From the NCBI GenBank assembly GCA_976226885.1, contig OZ320318.1, positions 55,118,001-55,182,000 on the forward strand: 64,000 nucleotides of DNA, in the 5' to 3' direction. Source of the DNA: Iphione sp. A-MEVVRFRX5 (Eukaryota). This document shows, in pieces, positions 19,120-59,700 of the stretch. A program made the position numbers and the translations under genes. The notes under the pieces were generated by a model. That model was not told the DNA's origin. It searched no databases and saw only the letters and a program-made list of their open reading frames with translations. How positions within the stretch are numbered: position 1 is the first letter of the stretch; each line of letters opens with the position of its first letter.

Positions 19120-19163
<44 letters not shown>

Positions 19164-40708: not shown

Positions 40709-40843
40709 NNNNNNNNNNNNNNNNNNNNNNNNNNNNNNNNNNNNNNNNNNNNNNNNNNNNNNNNNNNNNNNNNNNNNNNNNNNNNNNNNNNNNNNNNNNN
40801 NNNNNNNNNNNNNNNNNNNNNNNNNNNNNNNNNNNNNNNNNNN
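40709..40843. other. Assembly gap (135 N)
   Basis: Run of n in the sequence. Confidence 1.
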
Positions 40844-43800: not shown

Positions 43801-45082
43801 ATGTTTTTAATATTGCTCGACCTCTATCGTATTGCAGACGGCATCAGTATTCGGTGTCTGCGCCGATAAAACGCATTTGAACTGCCTTTAATAATCGGTT
43901 CGTCATGTAAGCTAAATCTCCATGTACATGTATCTGTTTAGTGTGTAATGTGTTTTCACAGCCATGGAGCACCATGAAAAGTTCACACCAAGTTCACCAT
44001 AAAAAGTAATTAAACGAGTGTAGAGCCTTGTATTACCCCAGTAGATTCAAATAGTTCCCAGTCCAGACACACATACACAGCCTTGAAAACATGGCGGAAT
44101 GGGACTTGTCCCATTCTAAAAACACACTGCACAGAGGCATGCAACGCACCACATTGTGTAAAGGGATACACTCCTCTTGCTATCCTAGATGCCCCAAATC
44201 GACAGCAACACACCAGCATGGGCGTTGAAACATATTTGTGAAAAATCGAGTACAGAGATATAGCCGTATTTTCTTAATTGGGTTCACATAGTTAAAGTAA
44301 CTTTGGGGTGTAATCATTACTGGCTTTTCGCGGTCTGGTGAGTGAGCCGTGCGCAGGGTAGAAAATAAAGTCCTCAGCTGGTGGTCCGAAACTGGCTTAT
44401 ACCAAGGGTAACCTTCAATTCAGTTCATTTATGCGACGCAAACTACATTCAAGTACATGTGCCTCCATCTAAAAGATAAACGACGGCAAGGTGGGAGTTT
44501 GACAAGAAAACCCTCGTTCCCACGTAGTTCTGTATTGAAGATACATCCTACAGTCTATCGACCATCTCGTATACGGAGCATTCCTCGATTTTTCATCCGA
44601 CAGCAGGGCCTCCCATTATCCCAAAATGCACGGAGTATGTCCTGGCCCCTGAGAACAGACACGTGAGAACAGGACTCAAAGCACCGGCACAAGGAATCGT
44701 CTGCTGTATTCCCTTACTGAAAACCCTCCCGCCACGTATACACATGTACGTTTAAAAAAAACTATTTTCTAATTATATGTGTCACTGTTTTGTACACCCT
44801 ATGTATCGAGCCATACTCAAGAGACGTGTTTGGCTCTCTGACAACAGTACATGTAATATCCATGGCAACTCAATCAGTTAAGCTACATCTTAAAGCAGAA
44901 ATAGTGAGCTATAAAAGGTATTAATTTGTTCCTTTAGTTAAGAAAGAAAAGAGGCTTTCTGAGAAAAAAAAACGCTCCAAAGGCCTCCCTTAGTGCTGCC
45001 TTGGTTACCTTTAAGGTTTTCCCCAAGTTAACGCATATAGATCTGTGGTACTACGTAACAGCAAAAGTAAATACTATAGAAA

Positions 45083-45550
45083 GACGAGCCTGAGAATTGT
45101 TGGGGGGTAGCACGGAACATATATGTGGAGGACTTCAAAATTGCTTGTAGCATTTTGCTCGTATATTGTTGTCCTCTCTGGCAATATGTGACCAAAAGTA
45201 CAACAGAGAATTATGTCTCTAACTGACTGCTGCGTATCGACGAGATCTGTACGCGATTCAGTGATTTTTCCTCAACACTAATAACAATCACGTCTTTGCA
45301 CATTATACGTTTGTCCCCTCTAATGTATATCGCAGGACCCTGAATTTATTGTACACATTCTATATATACAAAATTCGGTTTTCTGAATCAGGATAACGAC
45401 AGACGTACTGATAACAACCGAGACAAATTGTTTTCCTGTTGCTCAATTAGACGAGCCTGAGAATTGTTGGAGGTAGCACAGAATATATATGTGGAGAACT
45501 TCAAAAATGCTTGTAGCATTTCGCTCGTATACTGTTGTCCTCTCTGGCCT
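45083..45550. repeat. Local ~98-bp direct duplication separated by ~270 bp
   Basis: GACGAGCCTGAGAATTGTTGG...GTTGTCCTCTCTGGC at about 45083 and about 45451, with roughly ten differences. Confidence 0.75.
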
Positions 45551-46104
45551 GTTGCTCAATTAGAAAGGTGTGTTAAATACTTCACAATACAGCTTCAGAA
45601 AAAGACGACTTAGTGCCACACATGAGTGTTATTCACCAACTAGATGAAGTGGGAGCAGGCAGTAAACTAATAAGATTAGTGAGAAGTTACCTCTCCCTAT
45701 GAAAACACTTTGTAAGATGCAAAGACGGTGACTCCAGCTGCAGGATTCTCAGACAGGGGTCCTGCAAGGGTCTGTGTGTGACTCACTTCCATAGTATACA
45801 TCAGCTGTGGTGTATGCCGACGATATGACTGTTTTGGCATATGCAAAGGACCCCTACAACTAAGGAAAATGGCCCCAAACACCCTAGAGCGTGTGATTAG
45901 GGCTTGGTCTTGAGTTGAGTGGTACCAAAATTGAGCAAGTGGGTGTAATGATCCTATTAGGGCTCATTGTAGATGATAGACTCAATTTTATAGAGGAACG
46001 CAAAAAGTAAGGAGGAAGTTGTGTGAAGTGGCATTGAAGATGCTGGTTAAGAAGAGAAGCTTGCCGGCTGTTCATAATCAGATGGCCATGTCACTCATTC
46101 CTAT

Positions 46105-46546
46105 TGTAAGACGTGGATGAATAAAGATGTGAACAACTCAGAGTCCAGTTCCAAACTGTTTATTACCTTCCAAAGTCAGAGTTTATATAGCCCATAGGGG
46201 CCACAGTCAGCCAATCAGGAAGTCAGACATGTTCCTCAACCAATCAGAAATCAGGGCCATTAGTGGCAACAATGTATCACACTTAAAGAAGCATCTCAAC
46301 CAATCAGTGCCTACCCTCCGACATGAGATACAAAGTAATCAATTTTGGAACGCCCCCCCACCAATCAGAGAGCTCCCCCCATTTAAGGAAGTGTGGGGTG
46401 ATCTGCTGTTGACCAATCAGGGTATAGCACCCGGCAGTGGAAATTTCCATACAAACGTGCGTGCGGTGTTCCTGGGGAAACCGGTGCACTATCTGGTTTG
46501 GGTGTGGTGTGTCAAAGTCCTATCTGGTGCGCCAGCCTATTCTACA
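46105..46546 (-). repeat. 3' LTR (442 bp)
   Basis: Five CCAATCAG boxes (46211, 46240, 46300, 46361, 46413); on the minus strand TATATAAA (46189-46182) and AATAAA (46164-46159). Adjacent to the PPT. Confidence 0.97.
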
Positions 46547-46560
46547 CTCTCCCTACCTTT
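46547..46560 (-). promoter_or_regulatory. Polypurine tract
   Basis: Minus strand AAAGGTAGGGAGAG directly abuts the TGTAGA start of the 3' LTR. Confidence 0.9.
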
Positions 46561-47168
46561 AAAAGAAAACCCCCCACCAAATCGACCAATCTTAATCGCT
46601 TTAAGCGGTTATAAATAACACAGAGGGGGTTAAGGGGGAGGGGCTCCAAAAAAATAAAATATGTGGTTTCTTACCCCAATGGTGTCTTCCATTGTCCTTC
46701 CTAACGTTCCTCGTTAACATCTTAGCGTCCTTCTTAAACTTGCCGACGGGCTATCAACATCTCAAATATCTGTTGTCCCTAATCCTCGACATATGTTTTC
46801 CCAGAGCCAACGGGCTCTCTAACAAAACTTGGGTCAAATACTTTGTTTGGGGCCAACTGGCCTTGTCATATGGGTCAACTTCTAAAAAAAATCACAGGGC
46901 TATCCCTACTTCTTGACATGTGCTTCCTGGAGCCAGTAGGCTCTCCAGCAAATCCGACATCCTCCAGTCCTCCGGGGCTACCATACCTCAGTCTAAGATA
47001 ATGCTTAATCATGTATACACTTCTGGAGGGCCAACGGGCCCTCCAACAAACCTCTAATTGTCTTACCGAATGTCCTCCGATCAATAACAGCTACAAGGTA
47101 ACAGTCCTTAATCTATAGGTTCTTCCTAACACCAGCGAATGTTCCGACCTGGACCCAGCTGTGCTGCT

Positions 47169-48710
47169 CTAATCTAAAAGGTAGGTCACTGGGTTAGCGT
47201 TCTTGCAGACGTCCACCATCGTGGGGTTTTCCCGCTCTTGATGTCTTCTGGCTGTCTCGGCTTCGTCGTGCCATAACCGTACCGTCTCTTCCGACAATGT
47301 CGGTGCCAAGGGGTTTGAGGGTCGCCAGTCTCTTATCTTCTCTAGTGCTGCCTGTATGGTTTGGTTATGAATCTCGGTGAGATTCTGAATGGGCTCCCAT
47401 TCTCCCCGCGATGGTGCCGCAGTCCCATCCAAAATCAGATATGGCCTCTTCTGTAGTGGTTCTAAGAGAGAATGGGGCATCTGAGGGTCCTCAGCTAGTT
47501 GGAGCACCCATGCCAATGACAGTCCTGCTATCAAGCGTGCTCCATTGCTAGCTGCTTCCCACCCTCGTGGTGGCCAGGTGAGTCCCGAAGGCAACCGCAC
47601 CCATGCTGGTGTTGGATCCTGCCGTACCACTGCCGGGTTACTCCCTATCCGTCCGTCTAGAAATCTTTCTAGATAGTCTTCCACCTTCCGTCGTCTCGAC
47701 CCCTCCGGGATGGCTTCTTGTAGAATGGCCCACAAGTCCCCTTCTTCCGTGGACGTTACATTAGACTCCGGTGATCCTGAGTCTTCTTTCCTCGATGTGT
47801 CAGGTCTGGTTGATGGTCTCAGGCCGGCAAGAGGGGATTCTGGCGTCGTTTCGGGCTTAGTTGTTGATGTTCCCTTGGTGGCGGGTATCAGTTGTGCACA
47901 CCTCTCCGGGGTTTCGTACTCCATTGGTACAACCAATGGTGTAGAACCAACAGATGACTTCCCTTGACAACGCTCTCTTAGATCCGGGAATCCTACCTGA
48001 TGAGACACGAACGTTGGGGGTCCTTGTCTGTCTCTCATTGTAGGCTCTCCGTGTTCTCCCCCAGCCACTTGCTCGGTAGTTGTCTCCTCTGTTGATGTAA
48101 GATCATCGTCACTCTGGGGGGTCCTTCGCCGCTTTCTGGTAGGGGAGCCGGCTAAATTAATGTCCTTGCGTCTTCTTGGTGGCGTCCCCTCGGCTGCAAC
48201 TTTCTTCTCTTTTGGAGTAGGTTCAAGAGGGACAGCCTCCTCCTCGGAATCTTCTTCCTCCCCAAGGACCACGGTGTTCTCCTTTGCGTAGCGCACCCAA
48301 GCTTCGACTCTCTCGCGGGATGAAGACTCCCCTTGCTTCCAGGCCCTCTGCAACTTGGAAATAGTCCAAGACGTCCAGTCTGCAGGGACATCTGCTGTCT
48401 CTTCTCCTTGTACGACTTGGTAGAGTGGGTGGTAGGTGCGCCCCGTGAGACCCAGGTTCACTGCCCAGGTGTGATGCCTGTTGTAGTGACGCTTCCACGA
48501 GAAGGTATTGATGCAGGTCTGAGGGCAGATTAAGCACGCCATCAGTTGGCTGTTATCGTGGTACGTCCTGACGTGCTTCCTCAACGACTTCTGTGAGGGG
48601 AAGATTTTCCTCTCCTGACACTGGTCACATAGTGTATATCCCTCTGGAATGGCTTGTCCTTCTTTTAAGACTCTTGGGGGTTTCTCTGGAAATTTCTTCT
48701 TTCTCGGCAT
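47169..48710 (-). CDS. Accessory ORF: 513-aa protein with two N-terminal C2H2 zinc fingers and NLS-like basic clusters
   Basis: CDQC-x14-H-x4-H with F-x5-L-x2-H, and CLIC-x12-H-x3-H. Basic clusters MPRKKK, PPRRRK, TRKRRR. Uninterrupted, inside the LTR pair; no signal peptide or TM, so not env. Confidence 0.85.
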   Translation of the reverse strand: MPRKKKFPEKPPRVLKEGQAIPEGYTLCDQCQERKIFPSQKSLRKHVRTYHDNSQLMACLICPQTCINTFSWKRHYNRHHTWAVNLGLTGRTYHPLYQVVQGEETADVPADWTSWTISKLQRAWKQGESSSRERVEAWVRYAKENTVVLGEEEDSEEEAVPLEPTPKEKKVAAEGTPPRRRKDINLAGSPTRKRRRTPQSDDDLTSTEETTTEQVAGGEHGEPTMRDRQGPPTFVSHQVGFPDLRERCQGKSSVGSTPLVVPMEYETPERCAQLIPATKGTSTTKPETTPESPLAGLRPSTRPDTSRKEDSGSPESNVTSTEEGDLWAILQEAIPEGSRRRKVEDYLERFLDGRIGSNPAVVRQDPTPAWVRLPSGLTWPPRGWEAASNGARLIAGLSLAWVLQLAEDPQMPHSLLEPLQKRPYLILDGTAAPSRGEWEPIQNLTEIHNQTIQAALEKIRDWRPSNPLAPTLSEETVRLWHDEAETARRHQERENPTMVDVCKNANPVTYLLD

Positions 48711-48783
48711 CCTGGACTAAGTCTGGCAACCCAGACGAGTGTGACGTAGGTATGGATGTGTGTGTTGGTTGACTCAGGGTTTG

Positions 48784-48885
48784 GCTGACTATGAGTAGCT
48801 GACTGTGAGTAGCTGACTGTGAGTAGTTGACTGTGAGTAGCTGTTGTAGTGACGGTATGATGTGAGTAGTTGTTGTAGTGACGGT
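48784..48885. repeat. Short tandem repeats upstream of the zinc-finger ORF
   Basis: Four ~14-bp GCTGACTGTGAGTA units, then two TGTGAGTAG(C/T)TGTTGTAGTGACGGT units. Confidence 0.8.
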
Positions 48886-49189
48886 CAAATCTAGTGTCCC
48901 CAAGGCCTGGACCCCTTGCAATCAGTCTCCTGTTTAGGGTACCCCTCCTAAGTAGGTTGATAAGAACTGACCTGAGTATGGTGCGCCCCTTCTTTCTTGA
49001 TCCTGATGTCTGTAGTAGATGACAGCTGGTTATTTACGGTTCTTCCCCTTCTATCAGCTGCTATTCACGTTACAACCACCTAAGTGTGGTAGGAAAACCC
49101 TAGTTTTGCTTCTAATTTCAGAAAAACGTTGTCCGTTTTCGTAATTTCTGCCGAAATCGTCTGCTGATTCTAGTTCTCCGCACTGCCTC

Positions 49190-49735
49190 GTGGTGGCGCC
49201 CCAGTGTTGGTGCGCTTCGAGTGCGGTGCGACAAGCATTTTCATTCAAACTTGGTCTTTTTCGTCTCGGATGGGCTTCATCGCAGGGGTGTTGCGTTGTC
49301 CACATACATTTCCTCGTTTTCGTGCTGTTTTTTAGGAAAGTCTGTGTGTTTCTGTACGATATTCGACCGGTGCGACGGCTTTAGTTCTTCTAAGTGCTGT
49401 GTGGTGGCGCCCCGATGTTGGTGCGCTTCGAGTGCGGTGCGCCAACTAGTTTCGTTCGACTCGCGAAAATGGAAGATTCTGATGTCTCGGGTGGGCTTCA
49501 TCGCATGGGTGTTGTGTTGCCAACATACATCTCCTCGTTTTCGTGCTGTTTCTTCGGAAAGTCTGTGTGTTTCTGTACGATATTCGACCGGTGCGACGGC
49601 TTTAGTTCCTCTAAGTGATGTGTGGTGGCGCCCCGCTGTTGGTGCGCTTCGAGTGCGGTGCGCCAATTATTTTCGTTCGACTCGCGGTCGGTGACGAAAA
49701 TGGAAGGTTCCGATGTCGTTGTGGCCCTATTTAAG
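49190..49735. promoter_or_regulatory. Internal promoter-like block: 2.4 copies of a 211-221-bp repeat ending at a TATA-like box
   Basis: GTGGTGGCGCCCC...TGGTGCGCTTCGAGTGCGGTGCG starts at 49190, 49401 and 49622. TATTTAAG at 49728-49735, with a CCATT initiator-like A 31 nt downstream (49759). Confidence 0.6.
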
Positions 49736-49814
49736 CTTCCTTGAGATGATTCGATGCCATTCAGCCCTAAGTACTTTCTTCAGGCAGCTGTCAACATCTC
49801 TTCACCTCCTCATC

Positions 49815-51279
49815 ATGGAAATGTGAGTTTTTGCTTGTCTCCCTTTGGCAGGATATCCTTGCTTGTCACTCCACCGCCATTGTTTATGTTATCCGGTGGC
49901 CTACTTGCATCTTCTGGTACAGGTTGATCAGGTATTTCTATTCATTTCCTGATATTTCCTCCTGCTCCATGATGATGTGGGTATCCCTCGGTACATTTCC
50001 ATGTGGTTTCGTATGCCTATTCTATGTCTATCCATGTCTTTCTCTCTCTAAAGGGATTAATTTTCACCCCTGTCACTATGCTGCATGTTGTCAAAGCATT
50101 ATTAGTTCTCACCCCTGTCACTATGATGCATGTTGTCCAGCATTGTGTACCACGGGGTCTGGTCCCCTAAGTGCCGAGGGGTCCTTGCCCGGTTACCTGT
50201 CTATGATAGCTGGTGGGGTCTTCAGGCTCTCGCTCATTTTCTGTCATTCTTTACCAGGGTTGACTCCCCTCCTTCAATTCTTGTAGGCATCACGTGATGG
50301 ACGATCCTGTTCGAGGTGGTTATGCACCCACTGACCCAAGGTGAGTGTTGTTAATTTTTAACAGTCTCCCAGTTTCTTCCTTCCTTCCCCCAGGTTTCCC
50401 GCAGTTCTCTGATGTCTGTTGCCTGTCTCTCTATCCCACAGGTACGGCGACGCTGCAGTGCCCGCTCCTTATGGTGTTGTTCCCGCGCCCGTTGAGGATT
50501 TCCCGTAAGTTACCAGTTAACGTCCTGTCTTGAGCGGAAACCGTACCTAGTCTCAGTCTTCCTCCGTTTAATTTTCTTCTAGTGTCCACTGTGCTCACAG
50601 GTTCGCCGACCTTGTGTTTTCCAGAGGTGCCCCTTACGTCGATATCTACTCTCCGGGGCCTCGGCTGCGTGTCTCTGGTGTCCGGGCCGCCCCGGAGGCC
50701 CCTTTTTACCTGGATGTGCCGGGCCATCTGGCCCTCTACGGGCCAGGATATACCATGGACCTGTCCTTACGCCGCAGTGACGACATCCTGACGGGTATCC
50801 TTGCAAGTGACCCGGCGCAGCCGACCACTATCGTCTGGCCTCGTGATGCAGCCCCGGTCGCTGGGGTTTGGCCCCAGGATGAGCCCCTGCCGTCACCGCG
50901 TTCCTTGGATGCGTACCTCGGTGGAGGGGACGGATGGGCTACGGTGGACAATGCCAGTACCTCCAGCTCAAGTGGTTATGCGACCGAATGGGAGTACGCT
51001 AGCATGACCACAGAGGTACTCGACCCTGGTCTCACTTCCGGGGACGATAGCAGCGACACATCAGATGTTCCAACACTAGTCAATCAAGGATCAGGGGGGT
51101 CTGCTCCAGCCTCACCCGATCCATCGACGTCGTCGAGCGTCTATGACACCCCCACTCGTTCGCCAGAGCTGCCGCCTGGACTAGATGTAGCGATCTTCGG
51201 GGCCTGGTGTGATGGCCTGGCTCCGGGAGATGCGCCGTTCTGGCCCATCTATGTCTCTTCCGACGAGGATGAAGATTAA
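49815..51279 (+). CDS. Spliced antisense accessory gene of the Gypsy element; 267-aa acidic, Pro/Ser-rich, lysine-free protein of unknown function
   Basis: Exons 49815-49822, 50287-50340, 50442-50504, 50601-51279. Donors GTGAGT, GTGAGT, GTAAGT with pyrimidine-rich acceptors, all phase 2, giving 804 nt open. Kozak aTCATGG, TATTTAAG at 49728, AATAAA at 51323. Confidence 0.75.
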
Positions 51280-51322
51280 TATCGTTTCACCTCCACTGCT
51301 TCCGTTGACATGTGCTTCTGGC

Positions 51323-51328
51323 AATAAA
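51323..51328 (+). terminator. Poly(A) signal for the antisense gene
   Basis: AATAAA 44 nt after the TAA stop, followed by a GT/T-rich tract (TTTGTGTCTTCTTGTCTTTCC). Confidence 0.7.
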
Positions 51329-51509
51329 ACTAGTAGACCTTCATATTTGTGTCTTCTTGTCTTTCCTCTCTAGCTAGCTAGCTTAGATAGTGTCACTGTG
51401 GTATCAATGTTTTCATTCTTGTTCTCCTAGGTTCTCCGTCGCGAAACCTGAAGCACCCTCCTGGACTTCACCATTCCAGAATCTTCCTGAGTTGGGTCCA
51501 TAGACTCAT

Positions 51510-51785
51510 TCCCAGGGCACTTCTCCGCATCCCGCTCCTCCAGGACTTTCGAGCTGAATCCTACGACTCACTCCCGGGGCACTTTCCTGCATCCCGCTCC
51601 TCCAGGACTTTCGAGCTGAATCCGAAGATTCACTCCCGGGGCACTTTCCTGTATCCCGCCACTCCAGGACTTTCGAGCTGAGTCCTTCGACTCACTCCCG
51701 GGGCACTTTCCTGCATCCCGTCACTCCAGGACTTTCGAGCTAAATCCGAAGATTCGCTCCCGGGGCACTTTCCTGTATCCCGCCG
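51510..51785. repeat. 62-bp tandem array (~4.4 copies) just after the pol stop
   Basis: GGGCACTTT recurs at 51515 (variant), 51577, 51639, 51701 and 51763. Confidence 0.9.
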
Positions 51786-51799
51786 CACCTGTCTTAATT

Positions 51800-54700
51800 T
51801 TAAACTAAGTTCTTGCGTCGCCACGACACGATCCACTTCGGTGGAGGTGATTTACGGTATGGTCTGAGTCGGTTCCGATGTATCACTTTTGGTTTCGCTG
51901 ACTTGGACTTTACTACCACAATTCGTCCAGGATCGAGGATGCGCACCGCTAACCATGGTCCCGTCCAAGGGAAGTGTATCTTTGGGCTCTTCCCCTTTGG
52001 AGGTTGGGCGTTGTGTAACCATAAGGCATCCCCTGCCGTTATCTCTTCTTGCTTCACCCGCTTATTATATTGCAGGGCCTGGGACTTTGCAGCTTGTTGG
52101 AGGTTTTCCCGAGTCTTCCGGTAGGCCGCCTGTAATCGTGCGTGTAGTCGGACGACCGCGTCGGGGTAGGTTTGTTGTTCTTCTTGCTCTTCCGGGTACC
52201 CATCCATTACATGTGCAGGCAGTACGACCTCCCTCCCAAACATGAGGTAGTTTGGTGTATACCCTGTACTGCTTTGTGGCGACGAGCGATACGCCATCAT
52301 TAACATAGGGAGTGCTTCATCCCACTCGGTATCTGTCTCAAAACAGTAGGCCTTGATCATGCGGCCCAGGGTCCTGAAGCTCCGTTCAATGAAGCCATCT
52401 CCCTGTGGGTGGTGGGGTGTCGTCCTCGTCTTCTTTATTTCTAGTAGGTCACACAGTTTAGCCATGACATCGCTACAGAAGTTGGTGCCTTGATCACTAT
52501 GAAGTTCCCTGCAGCATCCGTAACGGGCGATCACTTCCTCCATCAGTATTCGGACGATGCGTTCTGTCTTTTGATCAGGCATGGCGAATGCCTCGAGCCA
52601 CTTAGTAAAATGGTCCCCGACCATCAGAATGTATCGATTCGACCGGGACGTGACCGGGAGTGGGCCAGCTACATCCATGGCCCATCGTTCCATAGGTTCC
52701 CCGACTACATATGACTGGAGGCGGGTGCATGGTCGTTTCGGATTCTGGTGTAGTAGTGCACAGTGACAGTTCTTACAAACTTGTTCGACGTCTCCCTTCA
52801 TCCCTGGCCAGTAATACAGAAGAGACACCTGAAAGTGTGTTTTGTCAGTTCCCAGATGTCCACCCGCCACACCACCATGAGTCTGCATGACGGCTTCCTC
52901 TCGTCGTATCCTTGGCAACACAATTTGGAGTCGGGTGTATTCTGTATCGGTTCCTATCCATCGCCGGCACAGGATCCCTTTGTTCACCTCCAGACGATAC
53001 CATTGGCGCCATAGGCTTTTGGCCACGGTCGAGAGGGGGGATACCGCTTCCCACGGTGGTTGTGTCGATTCTTTTTCCATCAGTTGAAGGATGGGTCCAA
53101 TGTCTTCGTCCGCTAGTTGGTCACGGCGTAATTCAGTATCCCTTGCCCCAGCTGCACGTGCTCGAGTAATGGCTGCGACTGTTGGACCCAGATGTTCTTC
53201 TCCACATTGTCTACACGGTATTCGAGATAGTGCATCTGCATTCGCGTTGTTCTTTCCCGGACGGTGTTGAAACTGTACTTGGTACTGGCTTATGCGCTCT
53301 AGCCAACGGGCCAATTGTCCTTCTGGGTCTCGTATTCTGCTTAGCCAACTCACGGCGCCATTGTCGGTTCTCACCATCACGGGTTGTCCGTATAGGTAGA
53401 AATGGAAATGCTTCAGTGCCGCCACGACTGCCAGCAGTTCCTTTCGCATCGTGCAGTATTTCCTTTCGGCAGAGTTCAGGCTCCGGCTGAAATAGCCTAG
53501 TACCACCTCTCGTTGGTCCTGTTCCTGAGACAGCACGGCGCCCAATCCGACATTACTCGCATCCGTGTCCAGAAGATATCTGCCCACTGATCTCGGGAAT
53601 CCCAATATGGGGCTAGATGCCAGCTTGCCTTTTAGTTCCTTGAAGGCTGTGAGTTCATCTGGGCCCCATGTGAAGGTGGTTCGAGCGCCCGTCAACCGGT
53701 TCAGTGGCGCTGCCACGTGAGCAAAATTTGGCACAAACCTTCGATAGTAGGAGCAAATTCCCAGGAATGCTCGGACATCTGTGGTGCAAGAGGGAACTGG
53801 CCACTCTGTGATGCTTCGTGTTTTCTCGGGGTCGGTGGCCACCCCTTCCTGAGAGATACGATGCCCCAGGAAGTTGATCTCCCGCATGAACAGCTTGCAC
53901 TTAGTCGGTTTTAATTTCAGTCCGGCTGCCTCTATCCTTGTCAACACATTATCAAGTCGGTTCAATGTTTGTTGAAAATCAGTACCAAACACGAGTACAT
54001 CGTCGAGGTATACCAGGCATTGCTCCCACGACAGCCCTCGCAATACTGTGTCCATAAGTCTCTCAAAGGTCGCTGGTGCGTTGACTAACCCAAATGGCAT
54101 CACGGTGAACTCATAAAGGCCCAGGGAAGTAGAGAAGGCTGTCTTTTCCTGATCTTCTGGATGCATCCGAACCTGCCAGTACCCGCTTGCTAGATCTAAC
54201 GAGCAGAAATACCTGGCACCTGCCAGCATGTTGAGTGAATCGTCGATGCGTGGGAGGGGGTATGCATCCACCTTGGTTTTCTGGTTGAGTTTCCTATAAT
54301 CTACACAAAATCTGGTAGTGCCATCTTTCTTTTTTACCATAACCACAGGACTGGACCATGGGCTACGACTCTGACAAATCACCCCCAGCTCCTCCATCTC
54401 CCGTACTAGTTTTCTCTCTTCCTCTCTGCGGCTAAACGGTAATCTCCGGGGCGGTTGTTTAACCGGTTGAGCTGTGTCGGTAAAGATACGGTGTTGTACA
54501 GCATCGGTCTGTCCCATATCCGCTTTTCCCCGCGCTAGGGTGTGGCGATGGTCCCACAACAGTCTACTCAGCTCATCTCTCTGAGCGGGGTCCAGTGTAT
54601 CTTGTGTGTCTTTGAGCAATTTTTCTATTATCTCCCGGTAATCCTGATCAAAGCTCGGTTTCTGGGATTCCTCTCTCACTTGGCTGACTCTTCCCACGGG

Positions 54701-55399
54701 TGTCTGACTCACCGGAGTTCCCATCGCTACCATTGTCCCCTTGCGTAGACTAACTTCCATTTGAGATACATTCCATAATGGTACCACCGTCTCGGGTCCG
54801 CCTTTGATCACACAACGGACCCCTACTATGCCTTGTTGAATCAGAGACTCATGTACTCCTTCTACCAGCAGAGGATGATCAGTCCCTCCCTGCACCTTAG
54901 CAGACATCCCGGAATTGGGGGGTAGTTTGAGTTCCTCGGTTATATACAATTCGGTGGGGCCTAGCTGCATTACTCTTCTACATTCCTGACCAGTTGCTCC
55001 TAAAGAAAGTTCTCGCGTTTCTAGATTAATGATGGCCCGATTCTGTTTCAAAAAGTCGTTTCCGATAATTCCATCCCCTTCTATGTCCGCGAAGATGAAC
55101 TCATGTGCAAATTCTTCTTTTCCCACTCTGAACTCTAAAATTTGGCTCCCCTGAGTAGGGATAACGTGTCCTCCGGCTCCCACAATCCGCGTGGGGAGCC
55201 CCGTGGAGACTAGGCCAGGGATAACATGGGGGTTCACAATGGATACTTCCGCCCCTGTATCTACGAGTAAAAGGAGTTGCCTCCCAAAAATGCTCACCTT
55301 TAGATACAGTCCCCGGTCTGTCTCCATCGTGCTCCCCAGGCTTAGTGGGGCGGTCGATCCGTCCTGGCCTACTGGCTGGTCGACCGCTGTGCGTTTCCC
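51800..55399 (-). CDS. pol: Pol polyprotein (protease, RT, RNase H, integrase), entered by -1 frameshift
   Basis: Protease LVDTGAEVS; RT YPLPRIDD, MPFGL, YLDD; RNase H TDASNVGLGAVL, ELLAVV, TDNG; integrase H..H..C..C, MDVAGP, HSDQG, IERSFRTL; GPW (GPY/F-like) tail. The ORF-track frame is open 55708-51800 without stops. Confidence 0.97.
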   Translation of the reverse strand, partial: GKRTAVDQPVGQDGSTAPLSLGSTMETDRGLYLKVSIFGRQLLLLVDTGAEVSIVNPHVIPGLVSTGLPTRIVGAGGHVIPTQGSQILEFRVGKEEFAHEFIFADIEGDGIIGNDFLKQNRAIINLETRELSLGATGQECRRVMQLGPTELYITEELKLPPNSGMSAKVQGGTDHPLLVEGVHESLIQQGIVGVRCVIKGGPETVVPLWNVSQMEVSLRKGTMVAMGTPVSQTPVGRVSQVREESQKPSFDQDYREIIEKLLKDTQDTLDPAQRDELSRLLWDHRHTLARGKADMGQTDAVQHRIFTDTAQPVKQPPRRLPFSRREEERKLVREMEELGVICQSRSPWSSPVVMVKKKDGTTRFCVDYRKLNQKTKVDAYPLPRIDDSLNMLAGARYFCSLDLASGYWQVRMHPEDQEKTAFSTSLGLYEFTVMPFGLVNAPATFERLMDTVLRGLSWEQCLVYLDDVLVFGTDFQQTLNRLDNVLTRIEAAGLKLKPTKCKLFMREINFLGHRISQEGVATDPEKTRSITEWPVPSCTTDVRAFLGICSYYRRFVPNFAHVAAPLNRLTGARTTFTWGPDELTAFKELKGKLASSPILGFPRSVGRYLLDTDASNVGLGAVLSQEQDQREVVLGYFSRSLNSAERKYCTMRKELLAVVAALKHFHFYLYGQPVMVRTDNGAVSWLSRIRDPEGQLARWLERISQYQVQFQHRPGKNNANADALSRIPCRQCGEEHLGPTVAAITRARAAGARDTELRRDQLADEDIGPILQLMEKESTQPPWEAVSPLSTVAKSLWRQWYRLEVNKGILCRRWIGTDTEYTRLQIVLPRIRREEAVMQTHGGVAGGHLGTDKTHFQVSLLYYWPGMKGDVEQVCKNCHCALLHQNPKRPCTRLQSYVVGEPMERWAMDVAGPLPVTSRSNRYILMVGDHFTKWLEAFAMPDQKTERIVRILMEEVIARYGCCRELHSDQGTNFCSDVMAKLCDLLEIKKTRTTPHHPQGDGFIERSFRTLGRMIKAYCFETDTEWDEALPMLMMAYRSSPQSSTGYTPNYLMFGREVVLPAHVMDGYPEEQEEQQTYPDAVVRLHARLQAAYRKTRENLQQAAKSQALQYNKRVKQEEITAGDALWLHNAQPPKGKSPKIHFPWTGPWLAVRILDPGRIVVVKSKSAKPKVIHRNRLRPYRKSPPPKWIVSWRRKNLV
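55336..55399 (-). promoter_or_regulatory. -1 programmed ribosomal frameshift signal (G GGA AAC + H-type pseudoknot)
   Basis: Slippery heptamer at 55399-55393 in the gag frame, 5-nt spacer, stem 1 GCGGUCGA/UCGACCGC, loop CCAGG pairing with downstream CCUGG. Confidence 0.8.
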
Positions 55400-56262
55400 T
55401 GATTTGGTGTCGAGGTTGCTGTGGTGGTCACCAATTCCGGGCAGTCTCGGCGAAAATGACCAGGTTTGCCGCATTGAAAGCAATTGTTGTGCTTGGGTCG
55501 TGACTGGGCTCGCCTCTGTTGGAGTTCCATCCGTAATTTTTCCATCTCCTGTGCGAGAGTCTCTTCGATCTGTTTTCGGAGCGCCTCTTGAGTCGGTGTT
55601 GATGAATTTTCGGTTTGCAGGGCGCGAATCTTTCTCTTCTGAAACCGTTCTTGAAGTTCTACGGCCTGTATGGCCTCTTCCAATGTCTTGCAACCCTTCT
55701 CCAGGCATTTGAGATGTAGGTCTTCTGATAGAGCCTTCTGAAAAGTAGAAACTGTGGTGAGTTCCCGTGTCTCTTTGTCTACGTCCCCGTACGCGTTCTT
55801 CACTACGCGGCGTACGCGGTCTGCGAAGTCTCGGATGTCCTCTCCAGGTTTCCTCTTCGTGGTAGCGAGGTCTTGCATAGCTGCGAGGCGGTCCCGCCCT
55901 CGCCCGAAACGTTCACTTAGGGCTGCTACCTTACCTCCATAAGTGGAACGTTCCTCCCTGGACAGATCCCCGTAGAACGCTCGAGCACGTCCGGTTAGTG
56001 AAAGTCCTAGGACTGCCGATTTGGTTTCGTCCGTCCAGTTGCATACACCTGCCCATTCTTCGAATTGGGCCAGCCAGCCGTCCCAGTCACTCTTACCGTC
56101 GTATCGTTCCGGTCGTAGTGCATTCAACCTCATTGGCTCTTCCGGGGCGAGCACAAATGGTTCCACTTCTTCCTCTCCATCGCCCCCTGCCTGACCTGGC
56201 AGTGGAGAGGGAATCCGCAACTGGACCTCGTCGTCCACATCCACTATATGTGCATGAGCCAT
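55369..56262 (-). CDS. gag: Gag (297 aa) with CCHC zinc knuckle
   Basis: Retrotransposon capsid-like 'PERYDGKSDWDGWLAQFE...LSLTGRARAFY' and CFQCGKPGHFRRDC. ATG is 5 nt after the PBS. Confidence 0.93.
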   Translation of the reverse strand: MAHAHIVDVDDEVQLRIPSPLPGQAGGDGEEEVEPFVLAPEEPMRLNALRPERYDGKSDWDGWLAQFEEWAGVCNWTDETKSAVLGLSLTGRARAFYGDLSREERSTYGGKVAALSERFGRGRDRLAAMQDLATTKRKPGEDIRDFADRVRRVVKNAYGDVDKETRELTTVSTFQKALSEDLHLKCLEKGCKTLEEAIQAVELQERFQKRKIRALQTENSSTPTQEALRKQIEETLAQEMEKLRMELQQRRAQSRPKHNNCFQCGKPGHFRRDCPELVTTTATSTPNQGNAQRSTSQ

Positions 56263-56267
56263 ATCTT

Positions 56268-56285
56268 ATCCCACCGCTGCCACCA
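56268..56285 (-). promoter_or_regulatory. Primer-binding site complementary to tRNA-Leu
   Basis: Minus strand TGGTGGCAGCGGTGGGAT, 3 nt from the LTR, is complementary to ATCCCACCGCTGCCA+CCA, the 3' end of metazoan tRNA-Leu(AAG/TAG) as I recall it. Confidence 0.9.
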
Positions 56286-56288
56286 AAT

Positions 56289-56730
56289 TGTAAGACGTGG
56301 ATGAATAAAGATGTGAACAACTCAGAGTCCAGTTCCAAACTGTTTATTACCTTCCAAAGTCAGAGTTTATATAGCCCATAGGGGCCACAGTCAGCCAATC
56401 AGGAAGTCAGACATGTTCCTCAACCAATCAGAAATCAGGGCCATTAGTGGCAACAATGTATCACACTTAAAGAAGCATCTCAACCAATCAGTGCCTACCC
56501 TCCGACATGAGATACAAAGTAATCAATTTTGGAACGCCCCCCCACCAATCAGAGAGCTCCCCCCATTTAAGGAAGTGTGGGGTGATCTGCTGTTGACCAA
56601 TCAGGGTATAGCACCCGGCAGTGGAAATTTCCATACAAACGTGCGTGCGGTGTTCCTGGGGAAACCGGTGCACTATCTGGTTTGGGTGTGGTGTGTCAAA
56701 GTCCTATCTGGTGCGCCAGCCTATTCTACA
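56289..56730 (-). repeat. 5' LTR (442 bp)
   Basis: TGTAAG...TCTACA on +. No difference from the 46105-46546 copy by eye. Adjacent to the PBS. Confidence 0.97.
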
Positions 56731-59700
56731 CTATGGTACACAGCAGCGATACTATATTTGATTCCTCCATCAGGGGTGCTGTAAACATTCAGGCAAGATC
56801 ACTGAGGTACAAGGGTTTCAAAGCATGGAAGGCCCTCCCTAGGTCTGATAGAGACGTAGGATTTAAAAACCATTGTGTGATTTTAAAAATGTTATAAGAA
56901 AGAATTATATTGCACTATTGTAACTTTTGTACATATACTTCTAAATCTATTTCCTGTCATTTATTTTTGTAGTATTACCTTCACTGGAAGACCTCCTGTC
57001 CTGAGTTAATCAAGAAGTAAATAAAAGAATTTCAAATCCAAATGGGTCACTAAAGGAACAGTCCGGGCTGGATCTGAAAAAGCTCCAGGTGGAGGCAGTA
57101 CCCTTGGAGCAGTGGTGGTTGTAGCCTGCTATGAGATCCTGACAATTCAAGAAGTCTGTGAATTTGACAATCTTGTAATCATATAGGTATTCTCTTGCTA
57201 GGTTCTCACATGACGAAATACTGGTCTAGCATAGATATCAGAACAGAGAGGAAGGATAGGGTTCTAGGGTGTGTGGTCAGGACAATAGGAAATTTCCAAC
57301 ATCTGCAGCTCTGCTTCATTGCTAGTTTCATTTTTTAGTAAGAATCTCAAAGGAAAACTGCAAGACTGTGTGACAGAACATTGCAGATCAGTAGGCTAAC
57401 ATGAGTGGGAACTGTGAGAAGGCGGCACACTGGATATTCAAACCAGTAATGTAATTGAAGTATGATGCTTCCTCAATCTGCAACATGTTGTTTGATGACA
57501 AACTTCTCTGGTAATACATTTGTACCATTAGAAGAAAATGAATCATGGCAATAAAGATCACATCTCTGCTTAATAGGATGAACCTTGTGTGAATCAAACT
57601 CGAGTTTATGTCCAGCTGACTGGACTCTTACAGATGCCAGTGCACTTTCGCTGTTACTCAGGGACAGCAACTATGATTTAACTTGCTTAGAGATGATTTG
57701 TTTTGTACTGGAATAATTGCCTAGTGATGAATTTGTAATGTAACCAAACTTTATCAAGTATTACCTTAGATATGATTCTGATTGTTATATAACGTATATA
57801 GATGTATATCGACATGTCTAGTAGTTGTGGGCTAGCGGCCCCATTTTTCTACTTAATGCAGTGTCTTGCCTTGATTTATACATATACTAGTCAGGAAGCC
57901 ACTTTTGTTTCTGTTTGATTGTGTTACATTTTTTATTCCCACGAAAAAATCTGTCCTGATGAGAATGAGAATAAACATAATCAATTCAATTCAAGTGTTC
58001 TAATAAAGATTTAATTACTCAGTATATGGAATCAATCTAATATAAAGGTGTCACTTGGGTATAGTCGTAAACTTTCAGGGAATATAAATACCTGTAACAC
58101 ACAATACATGCATTTTAATGCTTACATGATAAAATTATACGATGAAACCTCTAATCAGGACCTACTCACTTCCTTACCCTGCTGCCTGTAATTGAAGGAT
58201 CGCCGATTTACGTAATAATGTCCAAATAACGCCATGTCTCTGACAGTTTCCTGCCTGCTAAACAGCAAACTGTACGTACATTCGTGTTGCATTCTTTTGA
58301 CTTTATTACGTGATGTAACAATTTGTCGATTGAAAAGTATCAAGATTAGGAATATTGTGTCCCGAACCCACTTTCCTCCAATCCTGACGTATATTATGAC
58401 ATTGAAGGGAACAAACACCTACAGAGGAAAGTCCCTGATCATGACACACTTAGATCTTTCACTAACTGTCCCTATTTGCGACATATTTCCGTTAGAGGCC
58501 ACTTAAAATCGATGTGCATGTAGTATATAATCTGTTCTTTCTTAGAGCGCCCTGATAGGAGAGGTGTCCCACTTGGAGACGTGTTCATGATATGGCTATC
58601 CATCTGCTTTTAAATAGATTAGGCGACGTATTAAGTCCACAGGCCTCACACATCTTGGTGTAGCTACTTTGTCTGTCATCATCGTCTCCTCAAAACCTTT
58701 CCACATGTTGACTCTCTGATGGAAAACGTCACCTGACATAATAGGAGTGTAATTATGCATCTATTCATAATTCATGTATGTATTTATGCATCTATTCATA
58801 ATTCATGTATGTCCAGATTTATCTGCAAAACCAAAAATTTGGTAATATTATATGAAAATAGAAAAATGCAAAAATCACGACTAGTCAGTCAACCTTTCTC
58901 TCTTTGGTATAAAAACCTTTGCTATTCAAGTAAATCTCCGACCTCTCATGTGTTACCTTGGGAAATCTCTAGAATGATACTCTAATGGATCCCTTCATCT
59001 TCTGTGTAAGAGTCGCTTATTTACTCTTTGTCATACCTTCCTCCAGAAAGGATCCATTTTCATTGCTTGGCTTATCTGATGTGAAGTGACAATGCTTTAT
59101 GTGACGAAGGCCAAAATACTTTTATTCCAATAATGTGGACTATGGGGTAAGGAACGCTTCTTGTACACACGAATAAATGATATCTGTGTTATGTTGACCC
59201 AACAGACCGTATTTTCCTTTGTTTCTTATCTTTAAGTAGCCTTTTCCAGAATACGTAGAGCCACAAATGTAACTTTCCATTATTTGTAGTTCCTTTTGGT
59301 CAGGGTTTGTGCTTATATGGTCCCTTTTGTGGGAAACATGCTAAAAGTAAGGGTCACTAGAAATTAATTGAGCATTTAGTGTTAAATTTTGGATTGCCTG
59401 GCATATACGTGTAGCTTTATCACTAACATTCATTGTTAATTTCAGCTTCGTACCATATACTTTACATGGGTTTTTTTACTTTTGTGGTTTGAAGATAGTA
59501 TAAACATAAATATGTTTGTTAAGTGTATGTTTACTAAAACCACGAGTGTGATATGCAAATGAAAAGAAAGTTATGCAAGTTACTACCGAATCAAATTTGA
59601 ACATCAATATCGATATGAAGAATGTTTATTTGTAACATGTTTATTTTTTCAACACCGAAAGACTTCACTGAATGGAAGGAAAAGTATTTCAGACAAGGGC

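What the first reader, a model, noticed from the sequence alone, without database searches (positions are those of the whole stretch)
46547..51799. Intact Gypsy element carries a two-gene divergent accessory module in place of env
Seen: between the pol stop (51800) and the PPT lie 5.2 kb organised as: 62-bp array | poly(A) signal | <- convergent spliced antisense gene | tandem-repeat promoter-like block | zinc-finger gene -> hairpin array | 3' LTR. Both ORFs are intact inside identical LTRs, so they travel with the element. Established: complex retroviruses encode regulators from internal promoters (foamy virus Tas/Bet) or antisense (HTLV-1 HBZ), and extra antisense ORFs are known from some plant Tat-clade elements. 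Simple animal Ty3/Gypsy elements normally have only gag/pol(/env). Inference: this is a 'complex' retrotransposon with its own transcription factor and a second regulatory or anti-defence protein. I cannot verify whether a related family has already been catalogued.
Basis: partly seen in the sequence, partly recalled or inferred. Interest (0 to 1): 0.92.

Follow-up and report, generated by a model that had tools for sequence, protein, structure and literature searches.

The report
Gypsy element with zinc-finger accessory gene
A complete, very recently inserted Gypsy-type retrotransposon in an animal genome carries two extra genes after its polymerase gene: a two-zinc-finger nuclear protein that related elements share and keep under selection, and an intron-containing gene on the opposite strand seen only in this copy. 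Extra genes of this kind are known, but this zinc-finger gene appears undescribed.

Summary
Window 46105-56730 (minus strand) is a 10,626-bp Ty3/Gypsy element.

The 513-aa sense ORF is real (0/500 shuffles). It starts with two classical C2H2 fingers. It has homologues in the same post-pol position in 6 of 7 related elements that could be inspected. In the sister family it is under purifying selection (dN/dS about 0.3, p about 1e-5; pol about 0.1).

The antisense unit is a well-formed gene model: TATA-like box, four exons, three strong GT-AG introns that keep the frame, 267 aa, AATAAA signal (0/1000 shuffles match it). It has no homologue anywhere, and no relative carries it.

There is no env-like protein. 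"Own transcription factor" is plausible but untested. "Anti-defence protein" has no support.

Accessory genes in animal Gypsy elements are already known (Cer1 CERV, MDG1 sORFs, bdelloid ORF3s). I therefore rate this a new variant of a known kind, interest about 0.6.

The parts
46101..46104 (.). Target-site duplication CTAT (left copy)
   Evidence: Same 4 nt at 56731-56734.
46105..46546 (-). 3' LTR (442 bp, TG..CA). U3 holds five CTGATTGG (inverted CCAAT-type) boxes, a TATA box and AATAAA.
   Evidence: 100% identical to 56289-56730; motifs read.
46547..46560 (-). Polypurine tract abutting the 3' LTR
   Evidence: Purine run read directly in the sequence.
46745..47060 (-). Array of five short GCC-N4-GGC palindromes/hairpins, about 100-126 nt apart, between the ORF3 stop and the PPT
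   Evidence: (family D7). Relatives carry tandem arrays in the same position. L009's array carries a similar GCC-N5-GGC motif.
47169..48710 (-). ORF3: 513-aa protein with two N-terminal C2H2 fingers (ligands C28 C31 H46 H51 / C59 C62 H75 H80), four basic clusters, an acidic stretch, a disordered middle and a helical C-terminal region with a WPPxxW motif
48784..48885 (.). 14-bp x4.3 and 29-bp x2 tandem repeats just upstream of ORF3
49171..49686 (.). 221-bp tandem block (about 2.3 copies) between the two divergent genes. CpG observed/expected is 1.36, the highest value in the element.
49728..49734 (+). TATA-like box (TATTTAA), 87 nt upstream of the first antisense ATG
   Evidence: Function not tested.
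49815..51279 (+). Antisense gene model, coding part: exons 49815-49822, 50287-50340, 50442-50504, 50601-51279; introns of 464, 101 and 96 nt. Product is 267 aa, pI 4.05, rich in Pro/Asp/Ser/Ala/Gly.
   Evidence: No homologue found.
51323..51328 (+). AATAAA poly(A) signal of the antisense gene
51473..51784 (-). 62-nt tandem array (4.5-5 units) directly after the pol stop. Each unit folds into two small hairpins on the sense strand. Alternate units carry a GTGAGT.
   Evidence: one pair shows AU/GC/GU variation among units.
51800..55708 (-). pol (1302 aa from the first ATG): protease, RT, RNase H, integrase; no chromodomain hit
   Evidence: Nearest relative is 57% identical.
55369..56262 (-). gag (297 aa, one CCHC knuckle). 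A G GGA AAC heptamer lies 8 codons before the stop; pol is in the -1 frame.
56269..56285 (-). Candidate primer-binding site (starts TGG, 3 nt after the 5' LTR)
   Evidence: The tRNA was not identified.
56289..56730 (-). 5' LTR
56731..56734 (.). Target-site duplication CTAT (right copy)

Best explanation
This is a full-length, very young Ty3/Gypsy LTR retrotransposon of a non-chromoviral metazoan lineage.

Its post-pol region carries a lineage-conserved third gene, ORF3. ORF3 encodes a nuclear-type protein with a classical tandem pair of C2H2 zinc fingers.

Shown:
- ORF3 is an old gene of the element.
- Its homologue in the sister family is kept by selection.
- In this element and the three clade-A relatives (L001, L008, L009), ORF3 is followed by a repeat array.

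Inferred:
- The protein enters the nucleus. It has four basic clusters.
- It binds a repeated motif in the element's own arrays through its two fingers. The candidate sites are the palindromes after ORF3, and possibly the 221-bp and 14-bp blocks before it.
- Binding controls the element's expression. Most likely this is at the DNA level, as a self-encoded activator or organiser of the LTR or of an internal promoter. Less likely it acts on the RNA.

The + strand unit is a real-looking, intron-bearing transcription unit with its own TATA-like box and poly(A) signal. Its introns survive retrotransposition because the sense-strand genomic RNA cannot splice them. This unit is specific to this family. 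Whether its acidic, disordered 267-aa product works as a protein, or the antisense RNA itself is the active product, remains open.
For: Element:
- Identical LTRs, target duplication, gag/pol domains and -1 frameshift site.

ORF3 is real:
- The 515-codon open frame exceeds all 500 shuffles.
- GC by codon position (0.57/0.49/0.54) and the A-rich bias are like gag and pol.

ORF3 is conserved:
- A sense post-pol ORF with the same two fingers is present in L001, L002, L003, L004, L008 and L009.
- All eight zinc ligands are invariant.
- Window versus L009 gives two collinear matches, E 9e-9 and 5e-4. hhalign gives 95% probability, E 3e-8.
- The pol tree puts the window with L001, L008 and L009, which share the WPPxxW C-terminal region.

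Selection:
- In seven copies of the L001 family, ORF3 dN/dS is 0.27-0.48, with binomial p from 1.5e-5 to 2.8e-6.
- Among four copies there are 0 non-synonymous against 1-9 synonymous differences per pair.
- pol has dN/dS 0.10-0.19.

Finger type:
- The family profile matches DNA-binding tandem fingers of CTCF, ZNF568, ZBTB7A, BCL11A and SALL4, best E 4e-14.
- AlphaFold2 gives beta-beta-alpha for both fingers at pLDDT 63-71.

Nuclear signals and acidic stretch.

Arrays after ORF3.

Antisense unit:
- (0/1000 shuffles).
- Its introns and UTR share the element's sense-strand A>T skew (+0.33 to +0.35; gag/pol +0.2; host flanks about 0). Its large exon has only +0.12, as expected if coding on the other strand resists the bias.
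Against: - No binding, localisation or expression data exist.
- Only one copy of this exact family was available, so selection on the window's own ORF3 and antisense gene could not be measured.
- Outside the fingers the protein has no recognisable domain, and both structure models are poor (mean pLDDT 38).
- The window protein alone stays below Pfam's C2H2 cut-offs (19.7 against 27 bits).
- The palindrome array is not unusually stable as RNA. Its resemblance to L009's array rests on a short motif.
- L008's array lacks such palindromes.
- Two-finger modules can bind RNA or protein as well as DNA.
- The antisense product has no homologue. An antisense ORF in the sister family shows no constraint: 2 synonymous against 11 non-synonymous differences.
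Confidence: 0.55

Rival explanations
1. ORF3 works on RNA and not on DNA. It would be a Rev/CERV-like adaptor that binds the repeated stem-loops present in every sense transcript (the 62-nt array after pol and the palindromes before the PPT). It would promote export, stability or packaging of the unspliced genomic RNA.
For: - The best-studied post-pol accessory protein of an animal Gypsy element, Cer1 CERV, is a nuclear, fast-evolving protein needed for genomic-RNA export and may use a zinc-binding loop (PMC10309623).
- The 62-nt units fold into two hairpins each. One pair varies AU/GC/GU, and G-U works only on the sense RNA.
- The arrays sit where retroviral export elements sit, between the last gene and the 3' LTR (established knowledge).
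- Sense-strand GTGAGT donors lie inside the array, and acceptor-like sites lie upstream of ORF3. These would make the genomic RNA intron-containing.
Against: - The closest structural relatives of the fingers are DNA-binding.
- Folding of the arrays is at most weakly better than shuffles (z -1.63 and -0.05).
- The covariation rests on one pair in five non-independent units.
- No similarity to CERV came back from any search.
Confidence: 0.25
2. The antisense unit is a passenger. It would be a segment picked up once by this lineage (a host gene fragment or other foreign DNA), or a non-coding antisense RNA gene whose long ORF is incidental. It would not be a second accessory protein.
For: - No homologue in any database or relative.
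- In relatives the gap between pol and ORF3 is only 0.26-1.7 kb and holds no homologue of this gene.
- The product is low-complexity and acidic, with no predicted domain.
- GC by codon position is nearly flat (0.65/0.58/0.60).
- Antisense transcripts of LTR elements without coding role are known (reviewed in PMC7264820).
Against: - The gene model is complete and statistically unlikely by chance.
- Its non-coding parts carry the element's strand bias, which host DNA lacks, while the large exon resists that bias. This argues for long residence and some coding constraint.
- The unit has passed through at least one retrotransposition cycle.
Confidence: 0.4
3. ORF3 is a captured host zinc-finger gene fragment that merely rides along without serving the element.
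For: - C2H2 fingers are the commonest animal DNA-binding domain.
- The exhaustive search returns only ordinary host poly-finger proteins, and only weakly (E 3.5e-6 at best).
Against: - Conserved position, finger pair and C-terminal motif across elements whose pol is only 50-58% identical.
- Purifying selection in the sister family.
- Composition like gag/pol.
- No linker or finger number typical of host arrays.
Confidence: 0.05
4. The region is a degenerate env or a chance set of ORFs and repeats with no function.
For: - It occupies the env position.
- Long post-pol regions full of tandem repeats are common in LTR elements.
Against: - No signal peptide, membrane span or env-like family hit.
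- The ORF statistics and the conservation and selection data rule out chance for ORF3.
Confidence: 0.02

Closest known systems
CERV of the C. elegans Ty3/Gypsy element Cer1 (PMC10309623)
   Same: A gene in the env position of an animal Gypsy element. It encodes a roughly 500-aa, fast-evolving, lineage-restricted nuclear protein with a putative zinc-binding part, serving the element's own expression.
   Different: - CERV is made from a five-exon spliced sense mRNA that shares its start with gag.
- It has a Cys-rich C4-type loop and a G-protein-like domain.
- No sequence similarity to ORF3 was returned by any search here.
- ORF3 is a single unspliced ORF with classical C2H2 fingers.
sORF1/sORF2 of the Drosophila MDG1 group (412, mdg1, Stalker, blood) (bioRxiv 10.1101/2025.03.14.642691)
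   Same: - Accessory ORFs in env-less animal Gypsy elements whose pol is among the named relatives of this pol.
- sORF1 is nuclear, with a predicted DNA-binding-type fold.
- The ORFs are kept by low dN/dS.
   Different: - They are about 70-110 aa and lie upstream of gag.
- This element has only 26 nt between the 5' LTR and the gag ATG.
- This element has no small membrane protein.
ORF3 diversity in bdelloid rotifer LTR retrotransposons (PMC5408684)
   Same: Animal LTR elements with varied, non-env third ORFs after pol that travel with the element.
   Different: Those ORF3s are enzymes (GDSL esterase, DEDDy exonuclease) or env-like proteins. None is a zinc-finger protein.
Antisense additional ORFs of plant Tat-lineage elements (Grande gene23, RIRE2, Retand) (PMC7264820, PMC11963269)
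   Same: [quoted passage not shown]
- Long post-pol regions with tandem repeats.
- Orphan proteins of unknown role.
   Different: - Those are plant elements, and their antisense ORFs are conserved across many copies and species.
- Here the antisense gene is known from one copy, has three introns, and sits beside a sense zinc-finger gene.
Regulatory genes of complex retroviruses (internal-promoter transactivator of foamy viruses; spliced antisense HBZ of HTLV-1). Established knowledge; not fetched or compared here.
   Same: The same logic: an element-encoded nuclear regulator beyond gag/pol, and an intron-bearing gene on the minus strand.
   Different: - No sequence or structural similarity was found by any search with the finding's own proteins.
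- The likeness is architectural only.
- No expression data exist for this element.
Su(Hw)-binding array in the 5' UTR of Drosophila gypsy (established knowledge)
   Same: A Gypsy element carrying a tandem array of sites for a C2H2 zinc-finger protein.
   Different: There the protein is a host protein with 12 fingers. Here the element would encode the finger protein itself, and binding is only inferred.

Membership tests
Ty3/Gypsy (Metaviridae) LTR retrotransposon | Paired LTRs ending TG..CA with a short target-site duplication | tested here: met
   442-bp LTRs, 100% identical; CTAT duplication.
Ty3/Gypsy (Metaviridae) LTR retrotransposon | pol domain order protease - RT - RNase H - integrase | tested here: met
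   Pfam hits: RVP 136-225, RVT_1 458-618, RNase H 681-809, zinc-binding domain plus rve 932-1101.
Ty3/Gypsy (Metaviridae) LTR retrotransposon | gag with a CCHC knuckle; PBS and PPT next to the LTRs | tested here: met
   zf-CCHC E 1.8e-6. PPT and a TGG-initiated PBS candidate were read. The primer tRNA was not identified.
Chromovirus branch of Ty3/Gypsy | Chromodomain at the integrase C-terminus | tested here: not met
   No chromodomain family among the Pfam hits at E up to 0.1.
env-bearing Gypsy elements (errantivirus-like) | Post-pol ORF with signal peptide, membrane span, or a fusion-glycoprotein family or fold | tested here: not met
   No Pfam env family. Maximum 19-residue hydropathy is 1.06 for ORF3 and 0.89 for the antisense product. 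The ORF3 N-terminus is basic.
Classical C2H2 (beta-beta-alpha) zinc finger | C-x2-C-x12-14-H-x4-H ligand pattern, twice in tandem, with conserved ligands | tested here: met
   Pattern found in all seven ORF3 proteins. All eight ligands are invariant.
Classical C2H2 (beta-beta-alpha) zinc finger | Significant match to curated models or solved fingers | tested here: met
   The family profile against PDB matches CTCF and other tandem fingers, E 4e-14. Another family member reaches zf-C2H2 at E 1.5e-5. The window protein alone is below Pfam's cut-off (19.7 against 27 bits).
Post-pol two-finger ORF3 clade (defined here) | Sense ORF after pol with an N-terminal finger pair and a C-terminal WPPxxW region, followed by a repeat array | tested here: met
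   The window shares all three features with L001, L008 and L009. L002-L004 share the fingers only.
Cer1 CERV-type export factor | Sequence or fold similarity to CERV; spliced mRNA sharing the gag start | tested here: not met
   Searches with ORF3 returned only generic finger proteins. ORF3 is a stand-alone ORF. CERV itself could not be fetched, so this test is indirect.
Complex-retrovirus regulators (Tas/Tax/Rev/HBZ types) | Homology to those proteins | tested here: not met
   No such hit in Pfam, PDB or the protein libraries with either product. No comparator was fetched.
Complex-retrovirus regulators (Tas/Tax/Rev/HBZ types) | Internal or antisense promoter activity and action on the element's own expression | not testable with these tools
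   Only sequence motifs are seen: TATTTAA at 49728 and AATAAA at 51323.
Plant Tat/Retand-type antisense aORF | [quoted passage not shown] | tested here: inconclusive
   Position and orientation match. Conservation could not be tested because no second copy was available. No relative has it.
MDG1-group sORF architecture | Small accessory ORFs between the 5' LTR and gag | tested here: not met
   The gag ATG lies 26 nt after the 5' LTR.

The most novel reading that the evidence does not exclude
A widespread but undescribed clade of metazoan Gypsy elements carries a self-contained regulatory module. The module is a sequence-specific two-finger C2H2 DNA-binding protein plus the tandem array of its own binding sites. 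It would let the element set up its own enhancer, insulator or chromatin state wherever it lands. In this family the module has been joined by a second, intron-bearing antisense protein gene driven from a shared bidirectional repeat block. That would make it a retrotransposon with genuinely retrovirus-like 'complex' gene regulation.
Probability: 0.2. Interest if true: 0.85.

Novelty: new variant of a known kind. Interest (0 to 1): 0.6.

Why it matters
LTR retrotransposons are usually treated as gag-pol machines that depend on host factors for regulation. A third gene for a zinc-finger protein would add a new class to the short list of retrotransposon accessory functions in animals, which so far includes env, CERV, MDG1 sORFs and bdelloid enzymes.

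Three properties make this gene notable:
- It is conserved across elements whose polymerases are only about half identical.
- It is under purifying selection.
- In this element and its three closest relatives (L001, L008, L009) it is paired with a repeat array.

It also gives a concrete candidate for an element that brings its own DNA-binding or RNA-binding regulator.

The antisense gene is a natural example of the rule that only minus-strand introns survive retrotransposition. If it recurs in other copies, it would be a rare animal counterpart of the plant antisense aORFs.

For genome annotation, such ORFs are easily mis-called as host zinc-finger genes.

Tried and rejected
Searches that found nothing useful:
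- Word-indexed searches with ORF3 and with the antisense exon found nothing.
- The exhaustive HMMER search with ORF3 returned only nine weak, generic poly-finger proteins.
- The exact sequences of gag, pol, ORF3 and the antisense ORF are not in the 15-billion-protein collection.
- The metagenome scan with ORF3 found no relative. The scan with pol found only distant (26-56%) elements, which were not used further.
- No other copy or solo LTR of the element lies in the window.
- Rfam and tRNA scans of the region and the window found nothing.
- No nucleotide similarity exists between the post-pol regions of the window and its relatives.
- Five literature searches found no paper on a C2H2 ORF3 in an LTR retrotransposon. 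One further call (77) failed on a syntax error. Repbase, Dfam and GyDB could not be consulted.

Structure:
- Both AlphaFold2 runs (single sequence; 7-row alignment) gave mean pLDDT 38. I ran no fold search, because matches to such models are meaningless.

Ideas rejected:
- The 151-aa and 157-aa + strand ORFs (49831-50286, 49221-49694) are not coding. They have flat, T-rich composition at all codon positions. One lies in intron 1 of the model, the other in the 221-bp repeats.
- Antisense ORFs in the GC-rich L001 family are not genes: 2 synonymous against 11 non-synonymous differences.
- A nested insertion as the source of the antisense unit: no flanking inverted or direct repeats, and the strand composition is element-like.

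Host: not identified. It is an animal genome with a Fz-domain gene nearby.

Full report
**1. What is in the sequence**

The only long direct repeat pair in the window is 46103-46548 / 56287-56732, an exact match of 446 bp. Trimmed to TG..CA, the LTRs are 46105-46546 and 56289-56730 (442 bp, 100% identical). They are flanked by the 4-bp duplication CTAT.

The element lies on the minus strand and is 10,626 bp long.
- gag: 56262-55369, 297 aa, one CCHC knuckle.
- pol: 55708-51800, 1302 aa, with protease, RT, RNase H and integrase. No chromodomain was found.
- pol is in the -1 frame. A G GGA AAC heptamer lies eight codons before the gag stop.
- A purine tract abuts the 3' LTR, and a TGG-initiated primer-site candidate follows the 5' LTR.
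- U3 holds five CTGATTGG boxes, a TATA box and AATAAA.

No other fragment of the element is in the window.

**2. The 5,253-bp post-pol region (46547-51799)**

In element orientation it contains, in order:
- A 62-nt tandem array (51784-51473).
- The 3' end of a + strand gene with AATAAA at 51323.
- That gene's four exons.
- A TATTTAA at 49728 (+).
- A 221-bp x about 2.3 tandem block (49686-49171).
- 29-bp and 14-bp repeats (48885-48784).
- The 513-aa ORF3 (48710-47169).
- Five GCC-N4-GGC palindromes (47060-46745).
- The polypurine tract.

**3. Is it more than chance?**

The sense-strand open frame of 515 codons exceeds all 500 dinucleotide shuffles of the region (maximum 271).

The + strand open frame of 235 codons is reached by 12/500 regional and 7/1000 local shuffles. 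The gene model is much stronger than the ORF alone:
- The only three GTRAGT hexamers in the 1.7-kb stretch are each followed by a pyrimidine-rich YAG|G acceptor.
- The three introns (464, 101 and 96 nt) all preserve the frame.
- The result is a 267-aa ORF that ends 44 nt before an AATAAA.
- In 1000 shuffles, none gave a three-intron ORF of 267 codons or more, and two gave any ORF that long.

The sense-strand gene is intronless, while the antisense gene keeps its introns. This is what is expected for genes that ride through a sense-strand RNA intermediate (established logic; inference here).

**4. ORF3 is an old element gene**

Its product begins with two C2H2 fingers and has four basic clusters, an acidic stretch, a long predicted-disordered middle and a helical C-terminal third. 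Alone it is below Pfam's thresholds, and it has no significant full-length relatives in the two protein libraries.

I fetched the loci of the closest pol relatives (50-59% identity) and found the following.
- A sense ORF with the same finger pair lies after pol in L001, L002, L003, L004, L008 and L009.
- It is absent from L007, a plain 5.8-kb gag-pol element.
- L005 and L006 end too soon after pol to tell.
- Sources.

Further points on conservation:
- All eight zinc ligands are invariant in the seven proteins.
- The window protein (513 aa) and L009's (539 aa) give two collinear matches: fingers plus about 100 following residues (E 9e-9), and a C-terminal WPPxxW stretch (E 5e-4). L008 and L001 share the latter.
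- Profile comparison gives 95% probability.
- A neighbour-joining pol tree (no support values) places the window next to L001, and both with L008/L009. L002-L004 have a different C-terminal part and fall in another branch with L007.
- A profile of the family matches solved DNA-binding tandem fingers (CTCF, ZNF568, ZBTB7A, BCL11A, SALL4), best E 4e-14.

**5. Selection on ORF3**

No second copy of the window's own family was available, so I used the sister family. Its ORF3 cluster has 427 members and its pol cluster 777, all from one assembly. Seven copies were retrieved (L001, L040-L045).
- In two of them pol is interrupted at least once. They were left out of the pol comparison.
- ORF3 is intact in all seven.
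- Nei-Gojobori counts give ORF3 dN/dS of 0.27-0.48 in the deeper pairs (dS 0.044-0.08).
- The four most similar copies show no non-synonymous against 1-9 synonymous differences per pair.
- pol gives 0.10-0.19.
- The excess of synonymous change in ORF3 is significant, p from 1.5e-5 to 2.8e-6.

ORF3 is therefore a selected gene that evolves faster than pol, in the manner of viral accessory proteins. An antisense ORF in that family shows no such constraint (2 synonymous, 11 non-synonymous).

**6. The arrays**

In L009, L008 and L001 a tandem array starts within about 100 nt of the ORF3 stop (163 bp, 87 bp and 96 bp units). The window has five GCC-N4-GGC palindromes in 622 bp at that position, and L009's array repeats a similar GCC-N5-GGC motif.

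As RNA the window's stretch is no more stable than shuffles.

The 62-nt units after pol fold into two hairpins each, and one pair varies AU/GC/GU among units. The array as a whole is only mildly more stable than shuffles (z = -1.63).

Sense-strand GTGAGT sites inside that array, and acceptor-like sites upstream of ORF3, could define a sense intron that contains the whole antisense gene. This is untested.

**7. The antisense gene**

Its product is acidic (pI 4.05), rich in Pro/Asp/Ser/Ala/Gly, and without domain or homologue. No related locus encodes anything similar.

Its introns, 5' region and 3' UTR carry the same sense-strand A>T skew as gag and pol (+0.33 to +0.35 against +0.2). The host flanks have none. 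Its large exon has only +0.12. This argues against a fresh capture of host DNA and for some coding constraint. It does not prove a protein function.

**8. Mechanism**

- Shown: an intact element; a conserved and (in the sister family) selected two-finger ORF3; arrays next to it; a complete antisense gene model.
- Inferred: ORF3 is a nuclear, sequence-specific nucleic-acid-binding regulator acting on the element's own repeats.
- I favour DNA-level control of transcription, because of the finger type, the acidic stretch and the palindromic sites.
- The main alternative is an RNA export or packaging role like Cer1 CERV (PMC10309623).
- The antisense unit is probably transcribed and spliced. Whether the protein or the RNA matters is open.

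**9. Comparison and novelty**

Accessory genes in animal Gypsy elements are established: CERV (PMC10309623), MDG1 sORF1/2 (bioRxiv 10.1101/2025.03.14.642691) and bdelloid ORF3s (PMC5408684). Antisense ORFs are established in plants (PMC7264820).

I found no description of a C2H2 ORF3, and all homologues come from unnamed metagenome-assembly contigs. TE libraries could not be checked.

I rate it a new variant of a known kind, with interest 0.6.

**10. Conduct**

Only predicted exons of the antisense model were joined, inside a script, to test the frame. The N run at 40709-40843 was left alone.

Noticed in passing
window 17600-18079 (-) and 19020-19478 (-): One ORF holds a Frizzled-type cysteine-rich (Fz) domain (Pfam E 3.9e-15). 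A nearby ORF has a signal-peptide-like start and a long Thr-rich mucin-like run. They are probably exons of one host gene. The host species was not identified.
   Followed up: partly
window 33803-34762 (+): A 319-aa ORF matching the C-terminal half of a reverse transcriptase (RVT_1, E 3.2e-16). It is probably a fragment of a non-LTR retrotransposon.
   Followed up: partly
window 45082-45548: Two copies of a roughly 366-bp direct repeat (91-96% alike) just outside the element's 3' LTR.
   Followed up: no
window 40709-40843: A run of 135 N. It was left as it is.
   Followed up: no
window 46202-46225 / 56386-56409 versus 48770-48793: A U3 motif next to the CCAAT-type boxes is 75% reverse-complementary to the start of the 14-bp repeat block upstream of ORF3. 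This may be a shared regulatory motif or chance.
   Followed up: no
window 49171-49686: The 221-bp tandem block has CpG observed/expected of 1.36. The rest of the element has 0.36-0.99 and the host flanks about 0.6. This is a CpG-island-like patch between the two divergent genes.
   Followed up: no
L001 13679-14840 versus L042 5839-7000: In the sister family the 1,162-bp spacer between pol and ORF3 differs at only 0.86% of sites. Synonymous sites of pol and ORF3 differ by 2.4% and 4.5%. The spacer is either constrained (a cis-element) or has a different history through recombination.
   Followed up: partly
L008 12783-13124 and L009 12603-13034: These two relatives share a further small sense ORF between pol and the zinc-finger ORF (55% identity over 109 aa; no Pfam hit). 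The window has nothing similar.
   Followed up: partly
L008 1511-3108 / 17371-18968; L009 519-2977 / 16568-19026: These relatives have very long LTRs (1.6 and 2.5 kb) and total lengths of 17.5-18.5 kb, which is unusually large for animal Gypsy elements.
   Followed up: no
L042-L045 (one assembly, ERZ25767047): Four separate insertions encode an identical 920-aa ORF3 protein while differing at 1-9 synonymous sites. This points to a recent burst of the sister family.
   Followed up: partly
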